Below are positions 1-47,343 of a stretch of DNA of 64,000 bases, in pieces. The stretch covers positions 12,524,001-12,588,000 of the forward strand of contig NC_091977.1 in the NCBI RefSeq assembly GCF_044704955.1, given 5' to 3'. The notes under the pieces are model-generated. The model worked only from the letters and a program-made list of their open reading frames with translations, made no database searches and was not told where the DNA came from. A program made the position numbers and the translations under genes. Each line of letters opens with the position of its first letter. Within the stretch, counting starts at the first letter, position 1. Origin of the DNA: Pristiophorus japonicus (Eukaryota).

Positions 1-3000
1 GCAAACCTGGTGGTAACACACAATGGATCACAGAACCGCCTGCCACTCTGGATTGTTCCGGGAAATGGCCCCGCACTTTTGGGAAGAAGCTGGCTAGCCG
101 AGATGAACTGGAAATGGGGAGATGTGCACACCATTTCGTCTGTGGAGCGAAGTTCATGCTCGCAGGTCCTACAAAAATTCGAGTCACTGTTTCAACCCGG
201 TGTCGGAACATTCAAGGACACTAAAGTAGTGATACGCATCACTCCGGATGCCAGACCAGTGCACCACAAAGCCAGAGCGGTGCCGTACGTGATGCGTGAG
301 AAAATTGAGAGTGAATTGGACAGACTGCTCAGAGAGGGCATAATTTCACCCATTGAATTCAGTGACTGAGCAAGTCCCATCATTCCTGTCCTTAAAGCAG
401 ATGGCTCGGTCAGGATCTGCGGCGACTACAAAGCCACCATCAACCAAGTGTTGCTGCAAGACCAATACCCGCTACCGAGAGCGGAGGACCTTTTTGCCAC
501 GTTGACAGGTGGCAAGCTGTTCACTAAGTTGGACCTCACTTCAGCCTACATGACTCAGGAACTGGCTGAAGAATCCAAGCTTCTGACCACCATCACGACG
601 CACAAGGGACTATTCATCTACAACAGGTGTCCATTTGGGATTCGTTCAGCGGCTGCAATCTTCCAGAGGAACATGGAAAGCTTGCTCAAATCTATTTCCG
701 GCACAATCGTATTCCAAGACGACATCCTTATAACGGGTCGAGACACCGAGGAACACCTCCACAACCTGGAGGAGGTGCTATGCCGACTGGACCGAGTCGG
801 CTTGCGGCTGAAAAAGGCCAAGTGTGTGTTTTTGGCCCCAGAGGTCGAGTTTTTGGGCAGGAGGGTTGCCGCAGATGGGATCAGGCCTACCGAATCAAAA
901 ACGGAGGCGATCCATCGTGCGTCCGGCCCGGCAACACATCGGAGTTGCGATCGTTCCTGGGACTTTTGAACTATTTTGGGAAATTCCTGCCTAACTTAAG
1001 CACATTGTCGGAGCCGTTACATGTGCTCCTGCATAAGGGTTGTAACTGGTTCTGGGGGGACTGTCAGGAACGGGCTTTCAACAGGGCGCGGAATCTGCTT
1101 TGTTCTAACAAACTGTTGACTTTGTATGACCCCTGTAAAAAACTAGTTTTAACATGCGATGCATCATCATGCGGGGTTGGGTGTGTGTTGCAGCAGGGAA
1201 ATGACGACGGCCGACTACAACCGGTGGCTTATGCCTCCAGGTCGCTCTCCCCGGCAGAGTGTGATTACGGCATGGTCGAAAAGGAAGCACTCGCTTGTGT
1301 TTATGGTGTGAAAAAGATGCACCAATATCTTTTCGGCAGGCCATTCGAGTTAGAAATGGATCACAAGCCGTTAACATCCCTGTTGTCCGACAGCAAGGCT
1401 GTCAACGCCAATGCGTAAGCTAGCATACAGCGATGGGCTCTCACGCTGGCTGCGTATGACTACACCATACGGCACCGGCCTGGCACTGAAAATTGTGCTG
1501 ACGCACTCAGCAGGCTTCCGCTGGCCACCACCGAGGGGGCAGCGGAGCAAAGCGCTGAGATGGTCATGGCTGTTGAGGCTTTTGACACCGCAGGCTCCCC
1601 CATCACAGCCCGCCAGATCAAAATCTGGACAAACAGAGATCCCCTCCTATCCATGATAAAGAAATGTGTCCTGACTGGGAATTGGGCGCCCGCCCACAGG
1701 GCGTGCCCCGATGAGGTCAGACCGTTTTAGAGATGGATGGATGAGCTCCCCATCCAAGCCGACTGCCTACTATGGGGCAGCCAGGTGGTCATGCCCCAGA
1801 AAGGAAGGGAAGCGTTCATCAGGGAACTCCACAGCGAGCACCCTGGCATTGTGCTAATGAAGGCCATTGCCCGGTCACATGTATGGTGGACGGGGATTGA
1901 CTCAGACCTGGAACACTGGGTTCGCAGGTGCACGACGTGTGCCCAGCTGGGCAATGCCCCCAGGGAGGCCCCGCTCAGCCCGTGGCCCTGGCCCACCAGG
2001 CCATGGTCACGCATCCACATGGACTATGTGGGGCCGTTCATGGGAAAAATGTTCCTGATTGTAGTCGATGCATACTCGAAATGGATCGAGTGCATCATAT
2101 TAAACTTGTGCACGACATCCATCACTGTGGAAAGTCTGCGCACGATTTTCGCGACCCACAGCTTGCCAGACATTCTGGTTAGCGACAATGGCCCATGTTG
2201 CACCAGTTTATGTCAGGTAATGGCATTAAACATGTCCGGACGGCACCGTTCAAGCTGGCTTCCAATGGCCAGGCAGAACGTGTGGTCCAAATCATAAAAC
2301 AAGGCATGCTCCTTATCCAGGGACCCTCCCTTCAGTACAGCCTATCGCGCCTCCTGCTGGCCTATAGGTCCTGCCCGCACTTGCTCACGGGAGTCCTGCC
2401 AGCAGAACTCCTCATGAAACACATGCTCAAAACGCGGCTGTCCCTCATTCACCCAAGCCTGGCAGACATTGTTGAGGGCAAGCGGCAGTTCCAAACCGAG
2501 TGCCATGATCACAACTCAAGGGGGAGGTGTATAGAAATGGATGACCCGGTATTTGTGCTTAACCATGCACTAGGACCCAAGTGGCTTGAGGGCACCGTAA
2601 TTGGCAAAGAGGGAAATAGGGTCATAGCGGTCAGACTAAATAATGGGCAGATATGTCGCAAACATCTGGACCAGGTAAAGAAAAGATTCAGCATGGACAC
2701 TGAGGAACCTGAAATAGACCATGGGGTGTCAACCACACCACTGAACGAGCAACAAGGACAGTCAACAGCATGCACAGTCCCTGCGGCCAGCCCGGACAGG
2801 CCGGAACCAACTCAGAGACGCATGTCACGGCTCAACCACCAGAGCCACAACTGCGGCGCTCCACGAGAGAGCGTCGACCACCTGAAAGACTCAATCTTTG
2901 ATCCAAAGACATTGGGGGGGAGATGATGTCATGTTTGTAACCTTCACATAACTGTAACCAATATGTAACAACACTGTACACTGTATACAACTGTGAAATA

Positions 3001-3184
3001 CACACCTTGACCACAGGGGCTGAACTTGTGGGAGACACTCCTTACCTGGTCAGCCAGGTACTTAAAGGGAGGCTCCACGCAGGCTCAGCGCTCCTTGGTC
3101 CCGGGAATAAAGATGCAGGTCATGAGTGACCTTGTCTGCAGTATATGCCTCGTGTGAATATGTTCTAGAATTGAGAACTCTACA
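1..3184 (+). mobile_element. Gypsy (Ty3/Mag-like) LTR retrotransposon, 3' part: decayed pol (protease end, RT, RNase H, integrase), PPT and 3' LTR
   Basis: ORFs 10..2926 give RT (PFGIRSAAAIFQ, FQDD), RNase H (LTCDAS, EKEALA) and integrase (HSEHPG..CTTC, SDNG) across frameshifts and stops. PPT GGGGGGGAGA at 2914-2923; LTR TGTCATG...TCTACA at 2927-3184 with AATAAA at 3106. Confidence 0.93.
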
Positions 3185-5946
3185 ATGATGATGATGCATT
3201 GGTTGTCATGTTCCAAAATTCCACAGATGCTAGAACAGTTCCTGCGGATTGGAAGGTAGAAAATGTAACCTCACTATATAAGAAAGGAGGGAGAGAGAAA
3301 ACGGGAAAATACAGACCAGTTAGCCGGACATTACTTGTAGGGAAAATGCTAGAATCTGTTAATCAGGACGCGGTAACAGGGCACTTAGAAAATAATAATA
3401 GGATTGGGCAGAGTCAACACGGATTTATGAAAGGGAAATCATGTTTGCCAAATCTGTTTGAGGTTGTAACAAGCAGAATAAATAAGGGTGACCAGTGGAT
3501 GTAATGTATTTGGATTTTCAGAAGGCATTCGATAAGGAGCCACACAAGAGGTTATTAAACAAAATTAGGGCTCATGGGATTGGGGATAATATACTAGCAT
3601 GGATTGAGGATTGGTTAATGGACATAAAACAGAGAGTAGGAATAAACAGGTCATTTTCGGATTGGCAGGCTGTAACTAGTGGTGTGCTGCAAGGATCAGT
3701 GCTGGGGCCTCAGCTGTTCACAATCTATATCAATGATTTGGATGAGGGGACCGAATGTAAATATATCCAAGTTTGCTGATGATACAAAGCTGGTGGGAAT
3801 GTAAATTGTGAGGGGGAAGCTTCAAGGGGTATGGTCATCATCATCATAGGCAGTCCCTCGGAATCGAGGAAGCCTTGCTACCACTCCTGAAGTGAGTTCT
3901 TTGCTGGCTGAACAGTCCAATACGAGAGCCATAGACTCTGTCACAGGTGGGACAGATAGTCGTTGAGGGAAGGTGGGGGGGGAGTGGTGGGAATGGTTTG
4001 CCGCACGCTCTTTCCGCTGCCTGCACTTGATCTCTGCACGCTCTCGGCGTTGAGACTCGAGGTGTTCAGCACCCTCCCGGATGCACTTTCTCCACTTAGG
4101 GCGGTCTTTGGCCAGGGACTTCCAGGTGTCAGTGGGGATGTCACACTTTATCAGGGAGGCTTTGAGGGTGTCCTTGTAATGTTTATGCTGCCCACCGTTG
4201 GCTCGTTTGCCGTGAAGGAGCTCCGTGTAGAGCACTTGCTTTGGGAGTCCTGTGTCTAGCATGCGAACTATGTGGCCTGCCCAGCGGAGCTGATCGAGTG
4301 TGGTCAGTGCTTCAAAGCTGAGGATGTTAGCCTGGACGAGGACACTGATGTTGGTGCGCCGGTCCTCCCAGCGATTTATAGGAGACATTGTTGGTGATAT
4401 TTCTCCAGTGACTTGAGGTGTCTACTGTACATGGTCCACATCTCTGAGCCACACAGGAGGGCGGGTATTACTACAGCCCTGTAGACCATGAGCTTGGTGG
4501 CAGTTTTGAGGGCCTGGTCTTCAAACACTCTTTTCCTCAGGTGGCCGAAGGCTGCATTGGCGCACTGGAGGTGGTGTTGGATCTCGTCGTCGATGCCTGC
4601 TCTTGTTGATAGGAGGCTCCCAAGATATGGGAACGCCCTTGCTCCAAGCACTGACACCTGTTCAATCACAACCAGGAAACACCAGGACTGGTTTGATGAG
4701 AATGATCTGGAGATCCAAGAGCTAAGATCGCAAGTGCAGGGCATTTCTGAGCCTTAAACAACAACCCAACACGGGAGCAGCAAAGCAACATTACAGACGG
4801 CTCAAGGCTGAGGTTCAACAAAAAACCCGGGACCTAAAGAACAGGTGGTGGATGGAGAAAGCACAGGAGTTACTGCAGCTGGCAGACAGCCATGATGTGC
4901 AAGGATTCTTCATCGCAGTCAAGGCCGCCTACGGGCCAAACACCCAAGGACCCACCCCACTGCTGGCCAAGAACAGGGGAACACTCATCAAGGACACCGA
5001 GGCAGTCAGGGCCCACTGGAAGGAGCACTTTGAAGATCTACTCAACAGAGACTCTGCCTTTGACTCGAGTGTTCTCGACTCCATCCCGCAGCATTCGACC
5101 CGCCACCACTTCAGTAAGACCCCAACACTGCACTAGGTAGAAAAAGCCATAAGACAGCTTAAAAACAAAGGGGATACAAACAGGCTAAGTGAGTGGGCAA
5201 GAACATGGGAAATGGAATATAATGTGGCGAAATGTGAAGTTATCCACTTTGGTTGGAAAAATAGAAAGCAGAGTATTTTTGAAATAGTGAAAAATTAGGA
5301 AATGTTGGTGTTCAGAGGGACCTGGGTGTCCTTGTTTACGAATCACTGAAAGTTAACATGCAGGTACAGCAAGCAATTAGGAAAGCAAATGGTATGTTGG
5401 CCTTTATTACAAGAGGATTTGAGTATAAGAGTAAAGACACCTTACTGCACTTATATAGGGCCCTGGTGAGACCACAACTGGAGTATTGTGTAGTTTTTGT
5501 CTCCTTACCTAAGGAAGGATATACTTGCCATAGAGTGCAATGAAGGTTCACCAGACTGATTCGTGGGATGGGGGGATTGGCCTATGAGATGAGATTGAGT
5601 AGACTTGGCCTATATTCTCTGGAGTTTAGAAGTATGAGAGGTGATCTCATTGAAAGATTCAAGATTCTTACAGGGTTTGACAGGGAGGATACAGAGAGGA
5701 TGTTTCCCCTGGCTGGGGAGTCAAGAACCAGGAGTCACAGGGGAACCAGGGTTGTGGATGCTCACACGTTGAGTATATTCAAGACAGCTATCGATAGATT
5801 TTTGAATATTAAGGGAATCAGGGGATATGGGGATAGTGCAGGAAAGTGGAGTTGAGGTAGAAGATCAGCCATGAACTTATTGGATGGCGGAGCAGGCTCG
5901 AGGGGCCGAATGGCCTATTCCTGCTCCAATTTCTTATGTTCTTATG
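3185..5946 (+). mobile_element. CR1 LINE, 5'-truncated ORF2 to 3' tail, split by an RTE insertion at about 3833-5167
   Basis: CR1 RT peptides ([30 protein letters not shown]) at 3199-3779. The sequence resumes at 5168 and ends in a (TTCTTATG)n tail at 5946. Confidence 0.9.
3835..5167 (-). mobile_element. RTE LINE insertion with an inverted 5' segment
   Basis: 3835-4633 is the RTE 3' end on the minus strand ((ATG)n tail, LRWAGHIVRM, YLGSLLS). About 4665-5167 is an upstream RTE segment on the plus strand (TRKHQDWF, HWKEHFEDLLN). Confidence 0.88.
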
Positions 5947-6084
5947 TAGCTGAGCTCCATCACCACAATATTTCTGCCTTACAGTCGAGTTTCACACTTG
6001 TCTACAGGCTTTGATTAATTGTCTCTATTGTTGGTATCTCACCTTTGCTTGTCTGCGATTTGATCTCTCTCACTTTCTGTTCAG

Positions 6085-6184
6085 TTGCAGAGGCTTTCCC
6101 CGTTGCGATATTGTGCATTCCACTCGGAGTGAAACTCCTTGCTCTTTTCGTGATCTGTATCACTTTATACAGAGACAAAACCAG
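6085..6184 (+). CDS. Transmembrane exon of a Siglec-15-like activating Ig receptor (intramembrane Lys)
   Basis: Acceptor tctctctcactttctgttcag| and donor CCAG|gtatgt. The 100-nt phase 1-to-2 exon reads xAEAFPVAILCIPLGVKLLALFVICITLYRDKT(R): a hydrophobic span with a central K followed by basic stop-transfer residues. It resembles the SIGLEC15 GFKALLLL TM motif. Confidence 0.8.
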
Positions 6185-6564
6185 GTATGTAACATTGCTG
6201 GGAGACTCTTACCTTTAAATGGCTGAAGCCCGATTCCTGGGTGAGCCTTGGTCAGTGTGTGTTGGTTGGCAGGAGAGTCAAACACTTGAGCGATCCTAGT
6301 CGAGCCAATGACCACACAGTACATGTCCAGCCGGGATCACTGGATACCAGCAGGAGCAGGAACTCTGCGCAATGTTTCCTCTCCCTGTCCCAGTGGCATT
6401 TAGACCAATTGGTGAGCCCCAGCTGGGAATGGCTGGCAAATTTATATTTTTAAATGTGCGGTGAATCCTATTTAAACAGCCGCTGGTTGTATATGGAGGT
6501 GATGAAAGTGCTCTTATTTTATAGTTCACACAGCTCATTTTAATTGGTCTTGTTTTATCCACAG

Positions 6565-6580
6565 AAAGGAGCAGAACTGA
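6565..6580 (+). CDS. Terminal coding exon (short cytoplasmic tail RKEQN-stop) of the same gene
   Basis: Acceptor tcttgttttatccacag|A AAG GAG CAG AAC TGA. Phase 2 matches the TM exon donor. It is followed by about 500 nt of unique putative 3' UTR. Confidence 0.62.
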
Positions 6581-7083
6581 TCCACCCCAGGAGGCTGAGA
6601 AACCAAATGTACAAACCGCAGTATAAATCTTTTCTGCTCTCCCCGCACTGACTCTCACTCAGCAATTCAAGCTGAATTTGCTTTATTGATCAATTGTTGA
6701 ATGATCCAGATCCTGGCTGCAAAATTCTTCCTGTTAATCAGCTATTCGGCACAGCCCTGCATCACCTTGTCATTTTGAATGGAATCCTCGGAGGATCATT
6801 CCCAATATAAGTCTGTATAAACGCCCAGGCTTTATCTATGATCTGAATAGTGGGAGAGGACATGGGGCAGAGGTGACTGTGAGTACGATAGGTGGGAAAC
6901 GGCAATTATTGCATGTGATTTGCTCAGGGAACTGGCTGCTGTTTCCAACTCCTCGGCTGTGCCGGGAGATTCTGCTGGAGGTCAGCCAGCTTTCAATAGC
7001 TGACCTCAGAGTGAATCTGTGCTTTTACTGTCAGTGTATCAAAGTTAAATGATGGAGCTGCAATGATTGTGAAGAGTGCTCTA

Positions 7084-7089
7084 AATAAA
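7084..7089 (+). terminator. Candidate polyadenylation signal for the + strand receptor gene
   Basis: AATAAA about 500 nt after the stop codon, followed by TG-rich sequence. Confidence 0.4.
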
Positions 7090-8074
7090 CAATTGGTTGT
7101 GTATGAACATGGGCTCCTCCTTAGCATCGACTTGCATTTCATCGAATCTTACAGCACAGGAGGCCATTCGGCCCATTGTGCCTGTGCTGCACCTTTGAAA
7201 GCGCTATCCAATTAGTCCCACTCCCTCTGCTCTTTCTACATTGCCCCGCAACATTTTCACTTTCAAATGTTTCTCCAATTCTCTGTTGAAAGTTACGATT
7301 GAATCTGCTTTCAGGCAGTGCATTCCAGATCACAACTCGCTGCGTTAAATAAACATTCTCATCTTCCTTCTAACTAATTTATTGAAGTATGAAACGGCAT
7401 TATTTGTGTCTGTTAATGTGACAAATTAGAATGAGATTTGTAATATAAAGAATAACCCGTTTCATAGTCCAAAAGTTTTCGGTTTTTAATTGAGTTAAAA
7501 ATGACAAAGGTTAAATGGTAATCTGGTGAAATCCACACAGCAGAGTTTGCAGTTGGCTGGAGTTTGGTGTTTAAATCCACGTTCTTGTTTGTGATTTCTC
7601 AAGGCCTGTTGGTGAGGGAAGGTGCTGTAGACGTGTAGATTGGTGGCCTGCAGACGATGCCAGTGGTTTTCAGCAATGCTGATTGCAGCCAATGTTTTTT
7701 GTACTGGTGGTTGCTCGTTTCTGAGGGCCTTTGGTGTCTGTCTCTGTCCATTATCGAGTAGGCCGGCCATGAAGATTAGAGGCAATGGCAGTCAAAAGCT
7801 GAACTTGCCATGTTGTCTCTCGGACAGGTCACTGCCCTGTTCGATTTCAGTTGGCATCCCTTTCTTGTGGTTTTGTCACAGCTTAACGCTTCCTCTATGT
7901 TCCTCTCAGAAACTCTGTGCTTCCATCGCCAGCAAAAACAATTCAACAACACATTAAATATCACAATGTTGAGGAAATTATCACCAGATTATACAATTAT
8001 CGTAGCCTTGGACTAAAATGTTAGAAATAATTCTTTGACAATCGGCCATTGGTGATTGAGTGGTTCCCACTAAT

Positions 8075-11526: not shown

Positions 11527-12127
11527 CTAGCCTAACATCTGTGGTTGGGAAAATGTTGGAGTCCATTATTAAAGAAGCAGTAACAGGACATTTGGAAAAA
11601 CATAATTCAGTCAGGCAGAGTCAGCATGGATTTATGAAGGGGAAGTCATGTTTGACAAACTTGCTGGAATTCTTTGAGGATAGAAACATAGAAACATAGA
11701 AAATAGGTGCAGGAGTAGCCCATTCAGCCCTTCTAGCCTGCACCGCCATTCAATGAGTTCATGGCTGTACATGCAACTTCAGTACCCCATTCCTGCTTTC
11801 TCGCCATACCCCTTGATCCCCCTAGTAGTAAGGACTACATCTAACTACTTTTTGAATATATTTAGTGAATTGGCCTCAACAACTTTCTGTGGTAGAGAAT
11901 TCCACAGGTTCACCACTCTCTGGGTGAAGAAGTTTCTCCTCACCTCGATCCTAAATGGCTTACCCCTTATCCTTAGACTGTGATCCCTGGTTCTGGACTT
12001 CCCCAACATTGGGAACATTCTTCCTGCATCTAACCTGTCTAAACCCATCAGAATTTTAAACGTTTCTATGAGATACCCTCTCATTCTTCTGAACTCCAGT
12101 GAATACAAGCCCAGTTGATCCAGTCTC
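11527..12127. mobile_element. CR1 fragments (plus 11527-11680; minus 3' end 11681-12127)
   Basis: QHGFMKGKSC-coding DNA on plus; (ATAGAAAC)n tail and [10 protein letters not shown]...RVVNLWNSLP on minus. Confidence 0.85.
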
Positions 12128-12148
12128 CAGCTGCAGATGGTACCACCT

Positions 12149-14533
12149 GAGTGAGCTCCAAACAGTACCCTGTCTGTCTGATGGTAAGCTCCAGACCGTA
12201 CTCCCTGTCTGTCTGATAGTGAGCTGCAGACAGTACCCTGTCTGTCTGATGGTAAGCTCCAGACCGTACTCCCTGTCTGTCTGATGGTAAGCTCCAGACC
12301 GTACCCCCTGTCTGTCTGATAGTGAGCTCCAAACAGTACCCTGTCTGTCTGATGGTAAGCTCCAGACCATACTCCCTGTCTGTCTGATAGTGAGCTGCAG
12401 ACAGTACCCTGTCTGTCTGATGGTAAGCTCCAGACCGTACTCCCTGTCTGTCTGATGGTAAGCTCCAGACCGTACCCCCTGTCTGTCTGATAGTGAGCTC
12501 CAAACAGTACCCTGTCTGTCTGGTGGTAAGCTCCAGACCGTACTCCCTGTCTGTCTGATAGTGAGCTGCAGACAGTACCCTGTCTGTCTGATAGTGAGCT
12601 GCAGACAATACCCTGTCTGTCTGATAGTGAGCTGCAGACAGTACCCTGTCTGTCTGATAGTGAACTGCAGACAATACCCTGTCTGTCTGATAGTGAGCTG
12701 CAGACAATACCCTGTCTGTCTGATAGTGAGTTGCAGACAATACCCTGTCTGTCTGATAGTGAACTGCAGACAATACCCTGTCTGTCTGATAGTGAGCTGC
12801 AGACAATACCTGTCTGTCTGATAGTGAGTTGCAGACAATACCCTGTCTGTCTGATAGTGAGCTGCAGACAGTACCCTGTCTGTCTGATGGTAAGCTCCAG
12901 ACCGTACTCCCTGTCTGTCTGATGGTAAGCTCCAGACCGTACCCCCTGTCTGTCTGATAGTGAGCTCCAAACAGTACCCTGTCTGTCTGATGGTAAGCTC
13001 CAGACCGTACTCCCTGTCTGTCTGATAGTGAGCTGCAGACAGTACCCTGTCTGTCTGATGGTAAGCTCCAGACCGTACTCCCTGTCTGTCTGATGGTAAG
13101 CTCCAGACCGTACCCCCTGTCTGTCTGATAGTGAGCTCCAAACAGTACCCTGTCTGTCTGGTGGTAAGCTCCAGACCGTACTCCCTGTCTGTCTGATAGT
13201 GAGCTGCAGACAGTACCCTGTCTGTCTGATAGTGAGCTGCAGACAATACCCTGTCTGTCTGATAGTGAGCTGCAGACAGTACCCTGTCTGTCTGATAGTG
13301 AACTGCAGACAATACCCTGTCTGTCTGATAGTGAGCTGCAGACAATACCCTGTCTGTCTGATAGTGAGTTGCAGACAATACCCTGTCTGTCTGATAGTGA
13401 GCTGCAGACAATACTCTGTCTGTCTGATAGTGAGTTGCAGACAGTACCCTGTCTGTCTGATAGTGAGCTGCATACAATACCCTGTCTGTCTGATAGTGAA
13501 CTGCAGACAATACCCTGTCTGTCTGATAGTGAGTTGCAGACAGTACCCTGTCTCTCTGATAGTGAGCTGCGGACAGTATCCCGTCTGTCTGATAGTGAAC
13601 TGCAGACAATACCCTGTCTGTCTGATAGTGAGTTGCAGACAGTACCCTGTCTGACTGATAGTGAGCTGCAGACAGTACCCTGTCTGTCTGATAGTGAGTT
13701 GCAGACAGTACCCTGTCTGTCTGATAGTGAGTTGCAGACAGTACCCTGTCTGACTGATAGTGAGCTGCAGACAGTACCCTGTCTGTCTGATAGTGAGTTG
13801 CAGACAGTACCCTGTCTGTCTGATAGTGAGCTGCAGACAGTACCCTGTCTGTCTGATAGTGAGCTGCAGACAATACCCTGTCTGCCTGATAGTGAGTTGC
13901 AGACAGTAACCTGTCTGTCTGATAGTGAACTGCAGACAGTAACCTGTCTGTCTGATAGTGAACTGCAGACAGTAACCTATCTGTCTGATAGTGAGTTGCA
14001 GACAGTACCCTGTCTGTCTGATAGTGAGTTGCAGACAGTACCCTGTCTGACTGATAGTGAGCTGCACACAGTACCCTGTCTGTCTGATAGTGAGTTGCAG
14101 ACAGTACCCTGTCTGTCTGATAGTGAGCTGCAGACAGTACCCTGTCTGTCTGATAGTGAGTTGCAGACAGTACCCAGTCTGTCTGATAGTGAGCTGCGGA
14201 CAGTATCCTGTCTGTCTGACAGTGAGTTGCAGACAGTACCCTGTCTGTCTGATAGTGAGTTGCAGACAGTACCCTGTCTGTCTGATAGTGAGCTGCGGAC
14301 AGTATCCTGTCTGTCTGACAGTGAGTTGCAGACAGTACCCTGTCTGTCTGATAGTGAGTTGCAGACAGTACCCTGTCTGTCTGATAGTGAGTTGCAGACA
14401 GTACCCTGTCTGTCTGATAGTGAGTTGCAGACAGTACCCTGTCTGTCTGATAGTGAGTTGCAGACAGTACCCTGTCTGTCTGATAGTGAGCTGCAGACAG
14501 TATCCTGTCTGTCTGACAGTGAGTTGCAGTCAG
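12149..14533. repeat. Minisatellite of 33-bp units (GATAGTGAGCTGCAGACAGTACCCTGTCTGTCT) with 35-bp variants and a 171-bp higher-order repeat in its left half
   Basis: The tandem array is directly visible. Marker GTGAGCTCCAAAC occurs at 12151, 12322, 12493, 12960 and 13131. Confidence 0.97.
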
Positions 14534-17500
14534 TGGTGGAGACCGGGGGTTTCCTGTCCTGGTGGTTGGGCCCAGTATAAAAGGCTGCACACCATACTTG
14601 TGCAGCACTCTGGAGTTTGGAATAAAGGACCGAGGTCACTACAGTTCAAGTACAACATATTGCCTCGTGGAGTCATTCATAAGTACACTATAGACATAAC
14701 AGCTGGCGATGAGAATAAGGACTTTCATGCGATCATGGCTACCTTTAACACACTAAAAGAATATGCAGAGGGTGATGATTGGGATGCCTTCACGGAAAGG
14801 CTCGAACAATATTTCGTGGCAAACGACCTGGCAGGGGAGACGGACACATTGGAGGAGAAACGCAAGGCTATACTGCTGACCAGTTGTGGGCCCGAGGACT
14901 ACCGCCTCATCAGTGACTTGCTGACACCCACGAAGGCCAAGGATGAGACATACGATGAGCTGACTGAACTAATTGGCGACCAAATTAAACCAAAGGAGAG
15001 CATCCTCACAGCCAGGCACAGATTCTACACGCACCGCAGACCTGAGGGCCAAGAGACTGCAAAATATGCTGCCGACCTCAGGAGACTTGCGGCACCATGT
15101 GATTTTCGCATGCACCTCAACGAAGCATTGTGAGACATCTTCGTTATAGGAATTGGCCACGAGGGCCTCCTTCACAAGCTATTATCTGCCGACACCACAG
15201 TCAACCTGCAGAAAGCCATCGGCATCAGTCAGGCGTCCATGACCTCGACCTGCAGCACCAAGCAAATCATTCAGCCTGTGGACTCAATCCGGCAAGTACT
15301 GTACACGGAATGGTGCCTTTCACAGGCAAGACTGTAGAATGTGGCTCTGCCCAGGGCAGAGAGCATAGACCTCCGGTTTCCAGAACTCAGAGTCCGCCGA
15401 GGGGTGCTAATCGAGTAGCACCATGCTGGCGTTGCGGAGTACGTATGCAAAGCCTGTAACATGAAGGGCCACCTCCAGCATATGTGTAAAAGAAATACGA
15501 CTCACCGTCTAGCAGAGGAGTCGGTAGATGACTTTGAATCCAGCGGGGAGTATGATGATTTGACCAGAGAGGCAGCTCAGCCCCAAGAAGAAGTGTATGG
15601 AGTGTATAGCTGCACCACCGATTGTCCTCCAGTGAAGATGGAAGTCGAGATAAACGGCATTCCAGTCTTCATGGAAGTGGACACGGGAGCGAGCCAGTCA
15701 GTGATGAGCCAGGATGTCTTCGAGAGGCTGTGGAATGAAAAACGACCCGAGCTGGTTCCAGTACAGGAAAAGTTGTGCACCTACACCAAGGAGCTGATCC
15801 CAGTCCTTGGTAATGCGGACGTAAGTGTAATCCATAATGGCGTGGTGCATAAGTTACCTCTGTGGATTGTTGCAGGTGAGGGTCGAACGCAACTCGGAAG
15901 AAGGTGGATGGGGAAGATCCAGTGGAAATGGGAAGACCTCTTCACTCCAGCAATCGATGTCCCCCGTGCTCACCTTCGCTTGGGCCAGGTACTAGAGAAC
16001 AGACCAGCACAGCACCTGAGGCACAGACCGGCCATCACGACTGTGTGGCAATGATCTGACCAGAACGTCCTAAAAATACTTTCCCAGCTCCAGTGGCAGG
16101 ACTCCTGGGGAGGAATATCAAAATCACAGGTACCCGTCCAGCGTTTGTGGCAGAATCGCGGGAGAGAAGGATCAAGGTAGTCGACCTCGAGGACAGAGGC
16201 AAGATGGCGTTCCTGCTGCAGTGAGGAGCAGCGTGGTTGAAAAAAAAGATGGTCGTGGCAATATCATGAGGTGCAACGCTGAGGGACCAAAATGTGGGGT
16301 CCAACAAAGGATTTGATTGGGGTAAAGCCAGCAGGGTTCTCTTAAAGGAGACCTGCAACCTGAACTTAAAGAGACATCGTATATATGGCAATCAATATAA
16401 CGAACCGATTAAGATTGTGAACAGAATGTGTTGCAATATGTCGGTACTGTAATGAACAAAATGTTGTTGTGAGATGTCGGGAATAGAGTGTCCCCTAGAG
16501 CAGCAAGCGAACAAATTCGGGAGGGCAAAGGCGCGGAGGCTGATACCCTGCCCCAGGTCTATCCCACGCTGTAGGCATCCGTTGGCACCATTCGCCACGG
16601 ACCTGGAAACGAAACCGCCGCCAATACGTGCAGTCGGCCGCTGTTGCCCACCCCTCGGGTGGAGATGGTGCAGCCCCCAGACCCAGTCGCTACCTCGGCC
16701 ATGTCTGGGAGCGAAAGGACAGAACCAACGAGTTCCCCAAATGGACCTGGAACAGCCAGGTTCCCAACACTGAGAGAGCAGGCAGAAGACTCTGCAGCCC
16801 TCAAAGGAGGACAGGGAGGCCACACACATCTGTGGCTCTGCCCACCACTAGGCAACGGCCCTGAGTCCTGGCTCAGTGAGCGAACCAAGCCCACCCCGCT
16901 AGCAAGGGACGCAGCGCCACCATCAGGCGACTAGGACCCCGTCTGGTTGCTCTGGAACTAGCGTCCTCGCATACCTGCACTGCTACCTCAGTACTGACCA
17001 TGACTAAACCATGAATGCAATCTACCCAATCCTGCCGCACGACCGTATAACGTAACGAATGTAATTCACTGAACCAAGGTGTCACGATACAAACTGAAAA
17101 TGCTTTTATTTTTCTTCCTTTCTTTGTACTTGCACTGAGTCTGATCCTGTATGTTAATGTAACGGGCCAGCTGTATGATCTCGCTATGGGGGGGAGGTGG
17201 GGGGGGGAGGGGAAATGGATGTATGTAGCCATGGACACACACATGGATCACACCCAGACCTACTGGAACCTCCACTGCATCATCGAACCATCCAAATGTT
17301 GTGGCAAAAGAACTTGGGGGTTAACAGGGAGAGAGCCAAGCCAAAGCACAGCCAAGGTGCAAGGGCTATTGGCACTTAAGTCTGGGGAGAGCTAAGCCAG
17401 AGCACAGAGTGCAAAGGTAATTGGCACAAAGGACTTGGAAGAGAGTGATGTTGTATATGCTGACTATGGATGCACTCTATGTGTAGTCAATGTGAGATTG

Positions 17501-17754
17501 TATAATATGGAGACTTGTTTACCTGATGTACTATCAATAAGGTTCACACCGTGTACATACCTGCTGGCACCACTCGAGGGCGCAACTGGTGGAGACCGGG
17601 GGTTTCCTGTCCTGGTGGCTGGGCCCAGTATAAAAGGCTGCCCACCATGCTTGTACAGCACTCTAGAGTTTGGAATAAAGGACCGAGGTCACTACAGTTC
17701 AAGTACAACATATTGCCTCGTGGAGTCATTCATAAGTACACTATAGACATAACA
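14534..17754 (+). mobile_element. Non-autonomous Gypsy LTR element (gag + protease only) inserted in the minisatellite
   Basis: 5' LTR 14534-14701 (U3 deleted), PBS TGGCGATGAG at 14704, gag (DDWDAFTERLEQYFVANDL, CWRC knuckle), protease (MEVDTGASQS), PPT about 17437 and 3' LTR 17449-17754. Flanks are GTCAG/GACAG. Confidence 0.9.
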
Positions 17755-18075
17755 GACAGTACCCTGTCTGACCAATAGTGAGCTGCAGACAGTACCCTGT
17801 CTGTCTGATAGTGAGCTGCAGACAGTACCCTGTCTGACCAATAGTGAGCTGCAGACAGTACCCTGTCTGTCTGATAGTGAGCTGCAGACAGTACCCTGTC
17901 TGGCCAATAGTGAGCTGCAGACAGTACCCTGTCTGTCTGATAGTGAGCTGCAGACAGTACCCTGTCTGTCTGATAGTGAGCTGCAGACAATACCCTGTCT
18001 GTCTGATAGTGAGCTGCAGACAGTACCCTGTCTGATGGTGAGCTGTCTGATGGTAAGGCCCAGACAGTACCCCCT
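17755..18075. repeat. Right arm of the 33-bp minisatellite
   Basis: The same unit resumes immediately after the 3' LTR. Confidence 0.95.
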
Positions 18076-18149
18076 GGATGTCTAAGTACATACAGTGTAA
18101 GATAAAGAAAAAAAGGAAGGCTTATGACAGATACCGAGGGCTTAATACT

Positions 18150-42300: not shown

Positions 42301-45010
42301 TTGTGCTTTACACTTACCCCAGTGCTACTCTGCTCTGTTGCCTCCTGCCTTTTGCAGTCTTTCTTGAGGTCCTGTTCATCTGAGCTCTCACCCATTTTAA
42401 CTAGCTCAGAGCCCTCTCCTGGGTTCCGAATACTCCTCACATTGAGGCACAGAGCTTTCAGGCTTGCCTTTTTATTACACTTTGACCCTTTAGAATTTTG
42501 CTGTACAGTGGCCCTTTTTGTTTTTTGCCTCAGGTTTCTCTGCCCTCCACTTTTACTCATCTCCTTTCTGTCTTTTGCTTCTGTCTCCATTTTGTTTCCC
42601 TCTGTCTCCCTGCATTGGTTCCCATCCCCCTGCCATATTAGTTTAACTCCTCCCCAACAGCACTAGCAAACACTCCCCCGAGGACATTGGTTCCGGTCCT
42701 GCCCAGGTGCAGACCATCCGGTTTGTACTGGTCCCACCTCCCCCAGAACCGGTTCCAATGCCCCAGGAATTTGAATCCCTCCCTGCTGCACCACTGCTCA
42801 AGCCACGTATTCACCTGAGCTATCCTGCGATTCCTACTCTGACTAGCACGTGGCACTGGTAGCAATCCCGACATTACTACTTTTGAGGTCCTATGTTTTA
42901 ATTTAGCTCCTAGCTCCTTAAATTCGTCTCGTAGGTCCTTATCCCTTTTTTTAACCTATATCGCTGGTACCAATGTGCACCACGACAACTGGCTGTTCAC
43001 CCTCCCTTTTCAGAATGTCCTGCACCCGCTCCGAGACATCCTTGACGTTTGCACCAGTGAGGCAACATACCATCCTGGAGTCTCGGTTGTGGCCGCAGAA
43101 ATGCCTATCTATTCCCCTTACAATTGACTCCTCTATCACTATCGCTCTCCCACTCTTTTTCCTGCCCTCCTGTGCAGCAGAGCCAGCCACAGTGCCATGA
43201 ACTTGGCTGCTGTTGCCCTCCCCTGATGAGTCATCCCCCTCAACAGTACTCAAAGCGGTGTATCTGTTTTGCAGGGGGATGACCGCAGGAGACCCCTGCA
43301 CTACCTTCCTTGCACTGCTCTTCCTGCTGGTCTTCCATTCCCTATCTGGCTGTGGACCCTTCTCCTGCGGTAAGACCAACTCGCTACACGTGCTACTCAC
43401 GTCATTCTCAGCATCGTGGATGCTCCAGAGTGAATCCACCCTCAGCTCCAATTCCACAACGCGGTCCGTCAGGAGCTGGAGGCGGATACACTTCCTGCAC
43501 ACGTAGTCGTCAGGGACACCGGAAGTGTCCCTGAGTTCCCACATGGTTCAGGAGGAGCATATCATGTGACCGAGCTCTCCTGCCATGACTTAACCCTTAG
43601 ATACACTTAAATTGGCAACAACAATGCTTAAGTTTACTCACTGTTATAGAAAAGAAAAAAGAAAAACTACTCACCAATCACCAGCCAATCACTTACCCCC
43701 TTGGTTGTGACATCACCTTTCTATTTCTTTCAACTTCTTTTTTGCCTTCCCCCTGTAGCTGCACAAGCCACGCCTCTCGCTGAACTCGCGCTGCTCCTGG
43801 TCTCACTGGCCTTTTGTAGGCCCCTCCGATTCCCGGAACTCCCGCCTCTCGCTGAACTCGCGCTGCTCCTGGTCTCACTGGCCTTTTGTAGGCCCCTCCG
43901 ATCCCCGGAACTCCCGCCTCTCGCTGAACTCGCGCTGCTCCTGGTCTCACTGGCCTTTTGTAGGCCCTTCCGATCCCCGGAACTCCCGCCTCTCGCTGAA
44001 CTCGCGCTGCTCCCGGTCTCACTGGCCTTTTGTAGGCCCTTCCGATCCCCGGAACTCCCGCCTCTCGCTGAACTCGCGATGCTCCTGGTCTTACTGGCCT
44101 TTTGTAGGCCCCTCCGATCCCCGGAACTCCCACCTCTCGCTGAACTCGCGCTGCTCCCGGTCTCACTGGCCTTTTGTAGGCCCCTCCGATCCCCGGAATT
44201 CCCAGCTCTCGCTGAACTCGCGCTGCTCCTGGTCTCGCTGGCCTTTTGTAGGCCCCTCCGATCCCCAGAACTCCCGCCTCTCGCCGAACTCGCGCTGCTC
44301 CTGGTCTCGCTGGCCTTTTGTAGGCCCCTCCGATCCCCGGAACTCCCGCCTCTCGCTGAACTCGCGCTGCTCCCGGTCTCACTGGCCTTTTGTAGGCCTC
44401 TCCGATCCCCAGAACTCCCACCTCTCGCCGAACTCGCGCTGCTCCCGGTCTCACTGGCCTTTTGTAGGCCTCTCCGATCCCCGGAACTCCCACCTCTCGC
44501 CGAACTCGCGCTGCTCCTGGTCTCGCTGGCCTTTTGTAGGCCTCTCCGATCCCCAGAACTCCCGCCTCTCGCTGGACTCGTGCTGCTCCCAGTCTCTCTG
44601 GCCTTTTGTAGGCCCCTCCGATCCCCGGAACTCCCGCCTCTCGCCGAACTCGCGCTGCTCCCGGTCTCGCTGGCCTTTTGTAGGCCCCTCCAATCCCCGG
44701 AACTCCCGCCTCTCGCCGGACTCGTGCTGCTCCTGGTCTCGCTGGCCTTTTGTAGGCCTCTCCGATCCCCGGAACTCCCGCCTCTCGCCGGACTCGTGCT
44801 GCTCCTGGTCTTCATGGCCTTTTGTAGGCCTCTCCGATCCCCGGAACTCCCGCCTCTCGCCGAACTCGCACTGCTCCTGGTCTTCATGGCCTTTTGTAGG
44901 CCTCTCCGATCCCCGGAACTCCCGCCTCTCGCCGAACTCGCACTGCTCCTGGTCTTCATGGCCTTTTGTAGGTCTCTCCGATCCCCGGAACTCCCGCCTC
45001 TCGCCGACTC
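39301..45010 (-). mobile_element. Full-length CR1 LINE (5' monomer array, ORF1 zinc finger plus SGNH esterase, ORF2 EN-RT) with disabling mutations
   Basis: ORF1 YVCRKC, VVVHIGTSD, DGLHL (42638-43560); ORF2 ITETW and KFADDTK; (ATAAGAAC)n tail at 39301-39330. Confidence 0.93.
43771..45008 (-). repeat. About 17 tandem 72-bp CpG-rich monomers forming the CR1 5' end
   Basis: Period 72 (43771, 43843, ...). The minus-strand unit contains GGGGCCTACAAAAGGCC. Confidence 0.95.
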
Positions 45011-45405
45011 CTTGTATTTATACAGTACCTTTCATGACCTCAGGACGTCCCAAAGTGCTTTAGAGCCAATGAAGTATTTTTGAAGTAAAAACATAAAATG
45101 CTGGAAATCTCAGCGGGTCAGGCAGCGACTGTGGAGAGAAACAGAGTTAACGTTTCAGGTCGATGACCCTTCGATTCTGGTTCTGTTTTTATTTCAGATT
45201 CCAGCATCCGCAGTATTTTGCTTCAGTACTTTTGAAGTGTAGTTACTATTGTAATGTAGGAAACAAGGCAGCCAATTTGCACACAGCATGATCCTACAAA
45301 CAGCAATGAGATCATTCCTTTTAGTGAAATTGGTTGAGGGATAAATATTGGCCAGGGCACCAGGGAGAATTCCCCTGCTCTTCTTCGAAACAGTTCCGTG
45401 GATTT
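45011..45405 (-). mobile_element. Deu-SINE (minus) interrupted by a short Penelope/MER6-like element at about 45087-45223
   Basis: SINE core in reverse. The insert AAAATGCTGGAAATCTCAGC...CCAGCATCCGCAGTATTTTGCTT is flanked by AGTA(T/C)TTTTGAAGT duplicates; a similar piece lies at 46825-46915. Confidence 0.6.
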
Positions 45406-46957: not shown

Positions 46958-47343
46958 CTATTACCTGTAGACATGTTCCAGTTCTATGTTCAAACTCCTG
47001 TCCGGGCAAGTCAACTCCACACGGCAGAAGTATTGATTCGTATCATTTTTCACAAGTTTTTGTATCATTATCAACACATCATTTTTCCTTAGGTCTCCTG
47101 TCAGTCGATAGCGATTCTCTCCAGTTGGATTAGTCACATTCTGACTTATGCAGTTCTGGTGTTGGTCGACAGTTATACATTTAAAAATAGGCGGTCCAAA
47201 ACAATGCTTCTTTATCTTCCAGATGACTGTGATTCTCCCTCTATAGTCAATGTTGGGATGTGTCAACTTGCAAGACAAGATGACAGACTTTCCTTCCCAA
47301 CCGGTTACTTTCTGTGGACTTGACATTGACCATTCACTGCTGC
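46958..47343 (-). pseudogene. Siglec-15-like Ig V-set exon with a 1-nt frameshift near the G strand
   Basis: WSM..P..V..G..LSC.LTHP..Y.G.ITVIW..GP.IFKC..C..RYRL.G..RKND..D..YFCRVE follows the SIGLEC15 V-domain pattern. Branch point ctaac with acceptor cccacag|; donor ATAG|gtaagg. The exon is 386 nt (not 3n), and the G strand EFEHRTGTCLQVI is in another frame. Confidence 0.88.

What the first reader, a model, noticed from the sequence alone, without database searches (positions are those of the whole stretch)
6085..6580. Hidden exons of an activating Siglec-15-like receptor: TM lysine and a roughly 9-residue tail
Seen: a canonical AG/GT 100-nt exon encodes AEAFPVAILCIPLGVKLLALFVICITLYRDKT and splices in phase to RKEQN-stop. 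Neither reading is in the ORF track. Known: an intramembrane Lys with a motif-less short tail marks receptors that pair with the ITAM adaptor DAP12 (TYROBP), and SIGLEC15 has such a Lys. Inference: this is the 3' end of an activating Siglec-15-like gene whose Ig exons lie upstream of the window. A second in-frame acceptor (AG ending at 6090) could trim two residues.
Basis: partly seen in the sequence, partly recalled or inferred. Interest (0 to 1): 0.8.

Follow-up and report, generated by a model that had tools for sequence, protein, structure and literature searches.

The report
Sawshark activating receptor tail exons
These two small exons are the real, transcribed membrane anchor and nine-residue tail of a Japanese-sawshark immune receptor descended from Siglec-15; its buried lysine marks the "on-switch" type, but public databases already predict the protein under a misleading name and the signalling partner is untested.

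Summary
Observation confirmed. Exon 6085-6184 (AG/GT, 100 nt) and the terminal exon starting at 6565 are as described. Contigs from three public runs (one study) carry the exact 6184/6565 joint, with no depth over the intron, and continue 5' into an Ig G-strand that is not in the window.

The TM exon matches TM exons of a shark-and-ray receptor family (75% identical in horn shark "Siglec-15", same RKEQ(D/N) tail). It shares the PLGxK lysine position with bird, lungfish and teleost Siglec-15.

Qualifications:
- The exons are not hidden from public annotation. UniParc UPI00398EB587 (Pristiophorus japonicus, "myelin protein zero-like protein 3", 213 aa) ends in exactly the peptide encoded here. 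A 90%-identical sawshark relative (UPI00398E76FC) has the same TM exon.
- The ectodomain is V-V, not V-C2. This copy has Gly where Siglec-15 has its essential Arg.
- The public model for this copy starts inside V1 and has no leader, so this copy may be defective.
- The second acceptor at 6090 is unsupported.
- DAP12 pairing is inference only.

This scan had already found the family on neighbouring DNA. It is an ordinary member of a known kind of receptor; interest is modest.

The parts
6065..6084 (+). Polypyrimidine tract and AG acceptor of the intron that precedes the TM exon. That intron is longer than 6 kb, is filled with retroelements, and its 5' end lies before the window.
   Evidence: Sequence. 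Contigs of 3 runs begin their match at 6084/6085. The upstream 30-mer is absent from the window.
6085..6184 (+). Transmembrane exon, 100 nt. It starts with the last two bases (TT) of a codon begun in the previous exon and ends with the first two bases (AG) of a codon finished in the next. It encodes (V)AEAFPVAILCIPLGVKLLALFVICITLYRDKT.
   Evidence: Covered by spliced contigs in 3 runs. 33/33 residues identical to P0218 and P0206, and 75% identical to horn-shark proteins.
6132..6134 (+). AAA codon for the intramembrane lysine, residue 13 of the 25-residue hydrophobic core.
   Evidence: Lys is invariant at this column in all 40 proteins with a homologous TM segment.
6185..6564 (+). Intron, 380 nt, GT..AG.
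   Evidence: Joint in 3 runs and zero depth over the intron.
6565..6580 (+). Coding start of the terminal exon: A completes the Arg codon, then KEQN and TGA stop.
   Evidence: The tail RKEQN is identical to the end of P0218. RKEQD is found in P0206, horn shark and whale shark.
6581..7105 (+). 3' UTR, with AATAAA at 7084-7089.
   Evidence: Contigs cover 6562-7079 (X2) and 6562-7160 (X1). The exact 3' end was not determined.
6567..6626 (+). Second reading frame of the terminal exon, RSRTDPPQEAEKPNVQTAV with a stop at 6624-6626. It would be read if the TM exon is skipped, or if an acceptor 4 nt downstream is used (AG at 6567-6568).
   Evidence: It is identical to the end of sawshark isoform P0195 (second V domain joined straight to this exon). 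Horn-shark isoforms P0209, P0213 and P0173 have the TM exon followed by this frame. Use at this locus was not shown.

Best explanation
Window 6085-6184 and 6565 to about 7100 are the last two exons of a Pristiophorus japonicus gene. The gene belongs to a shark-and-ray receptor family descended from Siglec-15. Family members have a Siglec-15-like V domain, a second V domain, one transmembrane helix and a very short tail. They are joined 5' to the end of the second V-domain exon, which lies before the window. The TM exon, its central Lys and the RKEQ(D/N) ending are conserved from sawshark (Squalomorphii) to horn, whale, cat and hound sharks. The Lys is also conserved in rays, skates, chimaera and bona fide Siglec-15. 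Inferred: the Lys pairs inside the membrane with the Asp of a DAP12-type ITAM adaptor, as Lys274 of human Siglec-15 does. The receptor, which has no signalling motif of its own, would therefore activate the cell. A sawshark relative with an 80-86% identical ectodomain, an uncharged TM and an ITIM tail (P0204/P0207) would be the inhibitory counterpart. Skipping the TM exon, or a +4 acceptor, would put the terminal exon in its other frame and give a soluble or longer-tailed form. The public model that ends in exactly this peptide (P0218) starts inside the first V domain (V1) without a leader. This genomic copy may therefore be damaged at its 5' end.
For: - Splice sites and coding.
- Transcription and splicing: the 6184/6565 joint appears in contigs of 3 runs, with no intron depth, and the contigs extend 279 nt further 5'. 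The last 30 nt of that extension translate to QTETRLQLVH, the C-terminal strand of the second V domain in P0193 and P0205. That 30-mer is not in the window.
- TM exon homology: Smith-Waterman scores were 92, 79, 78 and 59 to bamboo shark, skate, manta and electric-ray proteins that had been found through their V domain. 200 shuffles gave a mean of 36.3, sd 3.5, maximum 51.
- Horn-shark proteins named Siglec-15 are 75% identical over the TM exon and have the same RKEQD tail.
- Lys is invariant in the homologous column of 40 proteins, including bird, lungfish and teleost Siglec-15.
- P0218 ends in exactly the encoded peptide.
- P0206 domain 1 hits Siglec-15 7zoz at E 4e-17, and Pfam finds two V-set domains.
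- Lys274 of human Siglec-15 is essential for DAP12 binding (PMC6941304).
- The inhibitory twin P0204 has an uncharged TM and a VIYAAV motif.
Against: - No adaptor was examined. I could not search this genome for DAP12, DAP10 or FcR-gamma, and four literature searches found nothing on shark DAP12 or shark Siglec-15.
- The RNA contigs are not identical to the window. They carry a silent T>C at 6143 and 2-5% differences over 6663-6800, in two forms. They read CGC (Arg) where P0218 has Cys. They may therefore come from another allele or a near-identical paralogue, not from this copy.
- P0218 has no signal peptide and starts in mid-V1. An earlier scan note, not checked here, says one upstream copy carries a stop codon.
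- The runs' library kind is not on record.
Confidence: 0.7

Rival explanations
1. The exons are intact, but this genomic copy is a young pseudogene or null allele. Its V1 exon would be broken, so no signal peptide or ligand-binding domain is made. The spliced transcripts seen would come from an intact allele or from a near-identical paralogue with its own copy of these exons.
For: P0218, the only public model ending in RKEQN, starts at the equivalent of residue 92 of P0206 and has no leader. The RNA contigs differ from the window at 6143, 6677, 6697 and elsewhere. They encode R where P0218 has C at the end of the second V domain. At least four 84-94% identical sawshark relatives exist. Scan note s1-878613 reports a stop codon in one upstream copy (not verified here).
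Against: Both exons and all four splice signals are intact. Parts of the 3' UTR match the contigs at 99.7-100% (6771-7160 with 1 difference in 390; 6800-6953 with 0 or 1). The R/C/H difference sits at a CpG site (CGC, TGC, CAC), so it could be an ordinary polymorphism.
Confidence: 0.35
2. The receptor is real, but its Lys recruits a different partner than DAP12. The partner could be a DAP10-like (YxxM) or FcR-gamma-like chain, or another membrane protein, so the outcome need not be classical ITAM activation.
For: Human Siglec-15 also binds DAP10 weakly when over-expressed (PMC6941304). No adaptor was identified here.
Against: From my own knowledge, not tested here: a central Lys with a motif-free short tail is the usual DAP12 signature. 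The Lys position is conserved with Siglec-15, for which DAP12 binding through this residue is established.
Confidence: 0.2
3. The main product is a soluble or long-tailed isoform, not the 9-residue-tail membrane form. TM-exon skipping, or the +4 acceptor, would put the terminal exon in its second frame, and the receptor would act mostly as a secreted decoy.
For: Sawshark isoform P0195 joins the second V domain directly to this terminal exon in the second frame. Horn-shark isoforms carry the TM exon plus that frame, 16/19 residues identical to the window's.
Against: The only joint seen at this locus in 3 runs is 6184/6565, with the TM exon included. The isoforms are automatic models.
Confidence: 0.15
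4. The TM exon and the minus-strand Siglec-15-like V exon at 46958-47343 are halves of one gene split by an inversion. This was raised in scan note s1-878795.
For: Both are Siglec-15-related, and they are the only two family exons in the window.
Against: The transcript contigs join exon 6085 to a V-domain end that is absent from both strands of the window. The minus-strand V exon is frameshifted. It is closer to lungfish Siglec-15 (47% identity) than to the sawshark V-V proteins (36-38%).
Confidence: 0.02
5. It is a chance open frame with fortuitous AG/GT borders in retroelement-rich DNA.
For: The exon lies about 140 nt after a LINE tail and is only 100 nt long.
Against: Spliced contigs, exact identity to public protein models and cross-species conservation.
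Confidence: 0.01

Closest known systems
Vertebrate Siglec-15 (human SIGLEC15, PDB 7zoz; bird, lungfish and teleost orthologues P0026, P0002, P0142)
   Same: The first domain of the sawshark family hits Siglec-15 best among solved structures (E 4e-17). The TM Lys lies in the same PLGxK context. In human Siglec-15 this Lys (Lys274) binds DAP12 (PMC6941304).
   Different: The second domain is V-set rather than C2-set. The tail is 9 residues instead of about 45-60 with a conserved STYEN motif. The model for this copy (P0218) and P0206 have Gly at the essential Arg (CGVE versus CRVE). The family is multi-copy rather than a single gene.
[quoted passage not shown]
   Same: They share a V-V ectodomain and a homologous TM exon with an invariant Lys. 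Tails are short and charged, and RKEQD is identical in horn and whale shark.
   Different: The window ends in N rather than D. These are automatic predictions with inconsistent names (Siglec-15, pIgR-like, A33-like, JAM-like, MPZL3, uncharacterized). My searches found no published description of the family.
Paired activating/inhibitory receptors that signal through DAP12, such as Siglec-14/Siglec-5, Siglec-16/Siglec-11, KIR2DS/KIR2DL and TREM2 (from my own knowledge)
   Same: One basic residue in mid-membrane, a tail without motifs, and a close relative with nearly the same ectodomain but an uncharged TM and an ITIM tail (P0204/P0207, 80-86% identical ectodomain).
   Different: Mammalian activating CD33-related Siglecs arose independently and mostly use Arg or Lys in another sequence context. 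Here the Lys appears inherited from Siglec-15 itself.

Membership tests
Siglec-15 orthologue | N-terminal V-set domain most similar to Siglec-15 | tested here: met
   P0206 has the same TM exon and is 90% identical to this copy's model P0218. Its residues 23-151 hit 7zoz at E 4e-17, the best of all PDB chains. The domain itself lies outside the window.
Siglec-15 orthologue | Essential sialic-acid-binding Arg (CRVE in strand F; human Arg143, a number taken from my own knowledge) | tested here: not met
   P0218 has WCGVEL and P0206 has RCGVEL, with Gly aligned to the Arg of 7zoz. Sawshark relatives P0193, P0205 and P0204 keep CRVE.
Siglec-15 orthologue | V-set plus C2-set ectodomain | tested here: not met
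   Pfam finds two V-set stretches in P0206, P0193, P0205 and P0172. The second domain matches TIM and pIgR V domains.
Siglec-15 orthologue | Transmembrane Lys | tested here: met
   AAA at 6132-6134. It occupies the same column as the Lys of bird, lungfish and teleost Siglec-15.
Siglec-15 orthologue | Cytoplasmic tail of about 45-60 residues with the conserved STYEN motif | tested here: not met
   The tail is 9 residues (RDKT, R, KEQN) with no Tyr beyond the membrane-edge LY.
DAP12-coupled activating immunoreceptor (functional class) | Single basic residue near the middle of the TM helix | tested here: met
   Lys is residue 13 of a 25-residue hydrophobic core.
DAP12-coupled activating immunoreceptor (functional class) | Short cytoplasmic tail without ITIM, ITAM or ITSM | tested here: met
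   Nine residues, none of these motifs.
DAP12-coupled activating immunoreceptor (functional class) | A DAP12/TYROBP adaptor with a TM Asp present and co-expressed in the same species | not tested
Scan note s1-877245 mentions a DAP12-like TM Asp elsewhere in this genome; it is unverified.
DAP12-coupled activating immunoreceptor (functional class) | Lys-dependent physical association and ITAM/Syk signalling | not testable with these tools
   This needs co-immunoprecipitation and reporter assays.
Elasmobranch V-V Siglec-15-derived receptor family, activating type | Homologous TM exon following the G-strand of the second V domain, in the same splice phase | tested here: met
   The RNA contig reads ...QTETRLQLVH, then V from G|TT, then AEAF. 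The same junction is seen in P0206, P0218, horn shark and skate.
Elasmobranch V-V Siglec-15-derived receptor family, activating type | Complete leader-V1-V2 front half belonging to this copy | tested here: inconclusive
   The front half lies outside the window. The public model with this exact 3' end (P0218) lacks the leader and the first 91 residues or so.

The most novel reading that the evidence does not exclude
The terminal exon may be dual-coding, and the family may use it as an isoform switch. With the TM exon and the 6565 acceptor it gives a 9-residue-tail, adaptor-dependent membrane receptor. With the TM exon skipped, or with the acceptor 4 nt downstream, the same bases are read in a second frame (RSRTDPPQEAEKPNVQTAV). 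That frame is 16/19 identical, with the stop in the same place, between sawshark and horn shark, two lineages on either side of the deepest split among living sharks. Together with activating copies that have lost the sialic-acid Arg while some relatives keep it, this would describe an undescribed, fast-evolving Siglec-15-derived paired/decoy receptor system in cartilaginous fish.
Probability: 0.25. Interest if true: 0.5.

Novelty: new member of a known kind. Interest (0 to 1): 0.3.

Why it matters
The result shows that the Siglec-15 membrane lysine is as old as jawed vertebrates. By inference, so is its adaptor-dependent mode of signalling. In sharks and rays it was reused in a multi-copy V-V receptor family that has activating, inhibitory and possibly soluble forms. 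For genome annotation, it shows that the public sawshark model for this copy carries a misleading name ('myelin protein zero-like protein 3') and is 5'-truncated. Two 266-residue sawshark models of the same family (P0193, P0205) stop at the second V domain. They may lack their TM and tail exons. For biology it is an expected type of receptor, not a new mechanism.

Tried and rejected
- Pfam on the 32-residue exon peptide gave no family, as expected for a TM segment.
- A word search with the minus-strand V exon (149 aa) found nothing, because full-length relatives exceed its length window. The one large HMMER search was therefore used.
- I searched the window for the 30-nt sequence that precedes exon 6085 in the RNA contig. 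There were 0 matches on either strand with up to 3 mismatches, so the upstream exon is not in the window.
- tblastn of 12 family proteins on the window found no C2, second V or second TM exon. It found only 6085-6184 (+) and 46958-47343 (-).
- The second acceptor at 6090 has no contig among those listed and no protein model using it.
- Literature searches for Siglec-15 or DAP12/TYROBP in sharks or cartilaginous fish returned nothing relevant.
I could therefore not fetch the upstream exons or confirm that P0218 maps to this locus at the DNA level.
- The spliced model was searched exon by exon only. The joined coding sequence was never built, typed or searched. P0218 and P0206 were compared with the exon peptides piece by piece.
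No N runs occur in the window.

Full report
**1. What is in the sequence**

The window is retroelement-rich vertebrate DNA with no N runs. Between a LINE tail ending near 5947 and a short repeat at 7145-7284 lies about 1.2 kb found only once in the window.

- It spans 6085-6184 and is 100 nt long. The acceptor is CTCTCTCACTTTCTGTTCAG|TT and the donor is CAG|GTATGT.
- It encodes AEAFPVAILCIPLGVKLLALFVICITLYRDKT.
- The next acceptor, TTGTTTTATCCACAG|A at 6565, completes an Arg codon. KEQN and TGA (6578-6580) follow.
- The hydrophobic core is 25 residues with Lys exactly in the middle. The best 19-residue Kyte-Doolittle mean is 2.68.
- The nine-residue tail has four basic residues and no Tyr motif.

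**2. Is it transcribed and spliced?**

The look-up of sequencing runs returned three runs from one study and one organism. Their library kind is not on record, and each holds 26-34% of the sampled words. When they were laid on 5900-8000:
- Each run has a contig with the joint 6181/6562 'cut +3', which is 6184/6565, GT..AG.
- Depth is zero over the intron (6184-6538) and over 5971-6041.
- Depth is 16-2262 over the exon and over 6539 to about 7100. AATAAA lies at 7084.

This is the pattern of cDNA. All three contigs enter at 6085, and none of those listed uses the AG ending at 6090.

Two contigs (508 and 645 nt) continue 279 nt further 5' into sequence that is not on the laid stretch. The last 30 nt are shown as a loose end. 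They translate in frame to QTETRLQLVH, followed by Val from G|TT. That 30-mer is absent from both strands of the window, so the upstream exon lies before the window.

One caveat applies. The contigs are 97.8-100% identical to the window, not identical throughout.
- They have a silent T>C at 6143.
- Two variant forms occur over 6663-6800, with 5 and 7 differences in 138 nt.

They may represent other alleles or a near-identical paralogue.

**3. What gene is it?**

Only one other family exon lies in the window. It is a V-set exon on the minus strand (46958-47343) that hits human Siglec-15 (7zoz) at E 4e-18.

I used that exon as a handle. The word search found nothing in its length range. The large HMMER search returned 187 relatives.

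I then compared the TM-exon peptide, on its own, with the 150 listed proteins.
- Scores were 92, 79, 78 and 59 against bamboo shark, skate, manta and electric-ray proteins.
- 200 shuffles gave a mean top score of 36.3, sd 3.5, maximum 51.

A word search with the bamboo-shark protein brought in Pristiophorus japonicus proteins.
- P0193 and P0205 (266 aa) end in ...QTETRLQLVH, exactly the RNA loose end.
- P0206 (UPI00398E76FC, 304 aa) continues from QTETHLQLVH into a TM exon 33/33 identical to the window's, and ends RKEQD.

A last word search on the C-terminal 50 residues of P0206 found P0218 (UPI00398EB587, 213 aa), named 'myelin protein zero-like protein 3'. Its last 38 residues are exactly what the two window exons encode, including the final Asn (checked piece by piece, nothing joined). 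The window therefore comes from the Japanese sawshark or a very close relative. The exons are already part of a public automatic model.

**4. Family features**

- P0206 has two V-set domains. The first hits Siglec-15 best (E 4e-17). The second resembles TIM and pIgR V domains.
- The TM exon is 75% identical in horn-shark proteins named Siglec-15 and 61% identical in whale and bamboo shark. It is also recognisable in catshark, hound shark, skate, manta and electric ray.
- The tail RKEQD is identical in sawshark P0206, horn shark and whale shark.
- The Lys is invariant in all 40 proteins with a homologous TM segment. These include elephant shark, lungfish, teleost and bird Siglec-15, which share the PLGxK context.
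- Sawshark P0204/P0207 has an 80-86% identical ectodomain. Its TM is uncharged and its long tail ends in VIYAAV, a canonical ITIM. The family is therefore a paired activating/inhibitory set.

**5. Mechanism**

Shown: the anatomy, the splicing and the conservation.

Inferred: the mid-membrane Lys pairs with the Asp of a DAP12-type ITAM adaptor. In human Siglec-15, Lys274 is essential for DAP12 binding, and DAP10 binds weakly (PMC6941304).

I could not test whether the sawshark has DAP12.

**6.

- The ectodomain is V-V, not V-C2.
- P0218 and P0206 have Gly where Siglec-15 has its essential Arg (CGVE versus CRVE). P0193, P0205 and P0204 keep the Arg. This copy is therefore Siglec-15-derived but probably not a sialic-acid lectin.
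- P0218 starts at the equivalent of residue 92 of P0206 and has no leader. An earlier scan note (s1-878613) says one of two upstream front halves carries a stop codon. This copy may be defective.
- The G-strand residue differs among copies: R, C or H (CGC, TGC, CAC). This is a CpG site. The RNA (R) does not match P0218 (C).
- The terminal exon is also used in a second frame (RSRTDPPQEAEKPNVQTAV). Sawshark isoform P0195 skips the TM exon. Horn-shark isoforms use an acceptor 4 nt downstream. The window has the needed AG at 6567-6568, but use at this locus was not seen.

**7. Verdict**

The exons form the membrane-anchor and tail end of an activating-type, Siglec-15-derived receptor gene. That kind of receptor is well known, and public databases predict this very peptide. 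The scan had already met the family on neighbouring and other DNA of this genome.

The family as such seems undescribed in the literature I could search, and adaptor pairing remains to be shown. Interest is modest at 0.3.

Noticed in passing
window 46958-47343, minus strand: A Siglec-15-like V-set exon (7zoz E 4e-18; 47% identical to lungfish Siglec-15). It keeps YFCRVE but changes frame right after it, continuing as DLPGQEFEHRTGTCLQVIG in another frame. Its length is 386 nt, which is 2 mod 3. No C2, TM or leader exon for it was found in the window, so it is probably a pseudogene fragment of the true Siglec-15 or a relative.
   Followed up: partly
window 6567-6626, plus strand: The second reading frame of the terminal exon is 16/19 identical, with the stop in the same place, between sawshark and horn-shark isoforms. 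That is higher than the TM exon itself (75%). It could be dual coding, or simply slow shark sequence evolution.
   Followed up: partly
window 6663-6800 (3' UTR): The RNA contigs show two distinct variant forms. One has 6693G, 6708T and 6767C. The other has 6730A, 6734C, 6749A, 6766A and 6770A. Both differ from the window at 6677 and 6697. They could be alleles or near-identical paralogues, and gene conversion is possible.
   Followed up: no
outside the window (end of the second V exon; seen in the loose end and in P0193, P0205, P0206, P0218, P0204): One G-strand residue is Arg (CGC), Cys (TGC) or His (CAC) in different sawshark copies. These are the two deamination products of a single CpG.
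   Followed up: no
public proteins P0193 and P0205 (Pristiophorus japonicus, 266 aa): Both models stop exactly at the end of the second V domain, in a splice phase where the next codon begins with G and so cannot be a stop. They look like 3'-incomplete models that lack their TM and tail exons.
   Followed up: no
window 11848-15130, 17695-18121 and 43650-45080: Long tandem repeat arrays that stay open in several frames on both strands, with peptide periods such as LTIRQTGYCLQ and RREFRGSEGPTKGQRDQEQ. They look like minisatellites and were not examined.
   Followed up: no
window 1-5947: The intron upstream of the TM exon is filled with retroelements. An LTR-retrotransposon pol (RT and integrase-like ORFs) covers 1-2923. 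LINE reverse-transcriptase fragments cover 3175-5947 and recur many times in the window.
   Followed up: no
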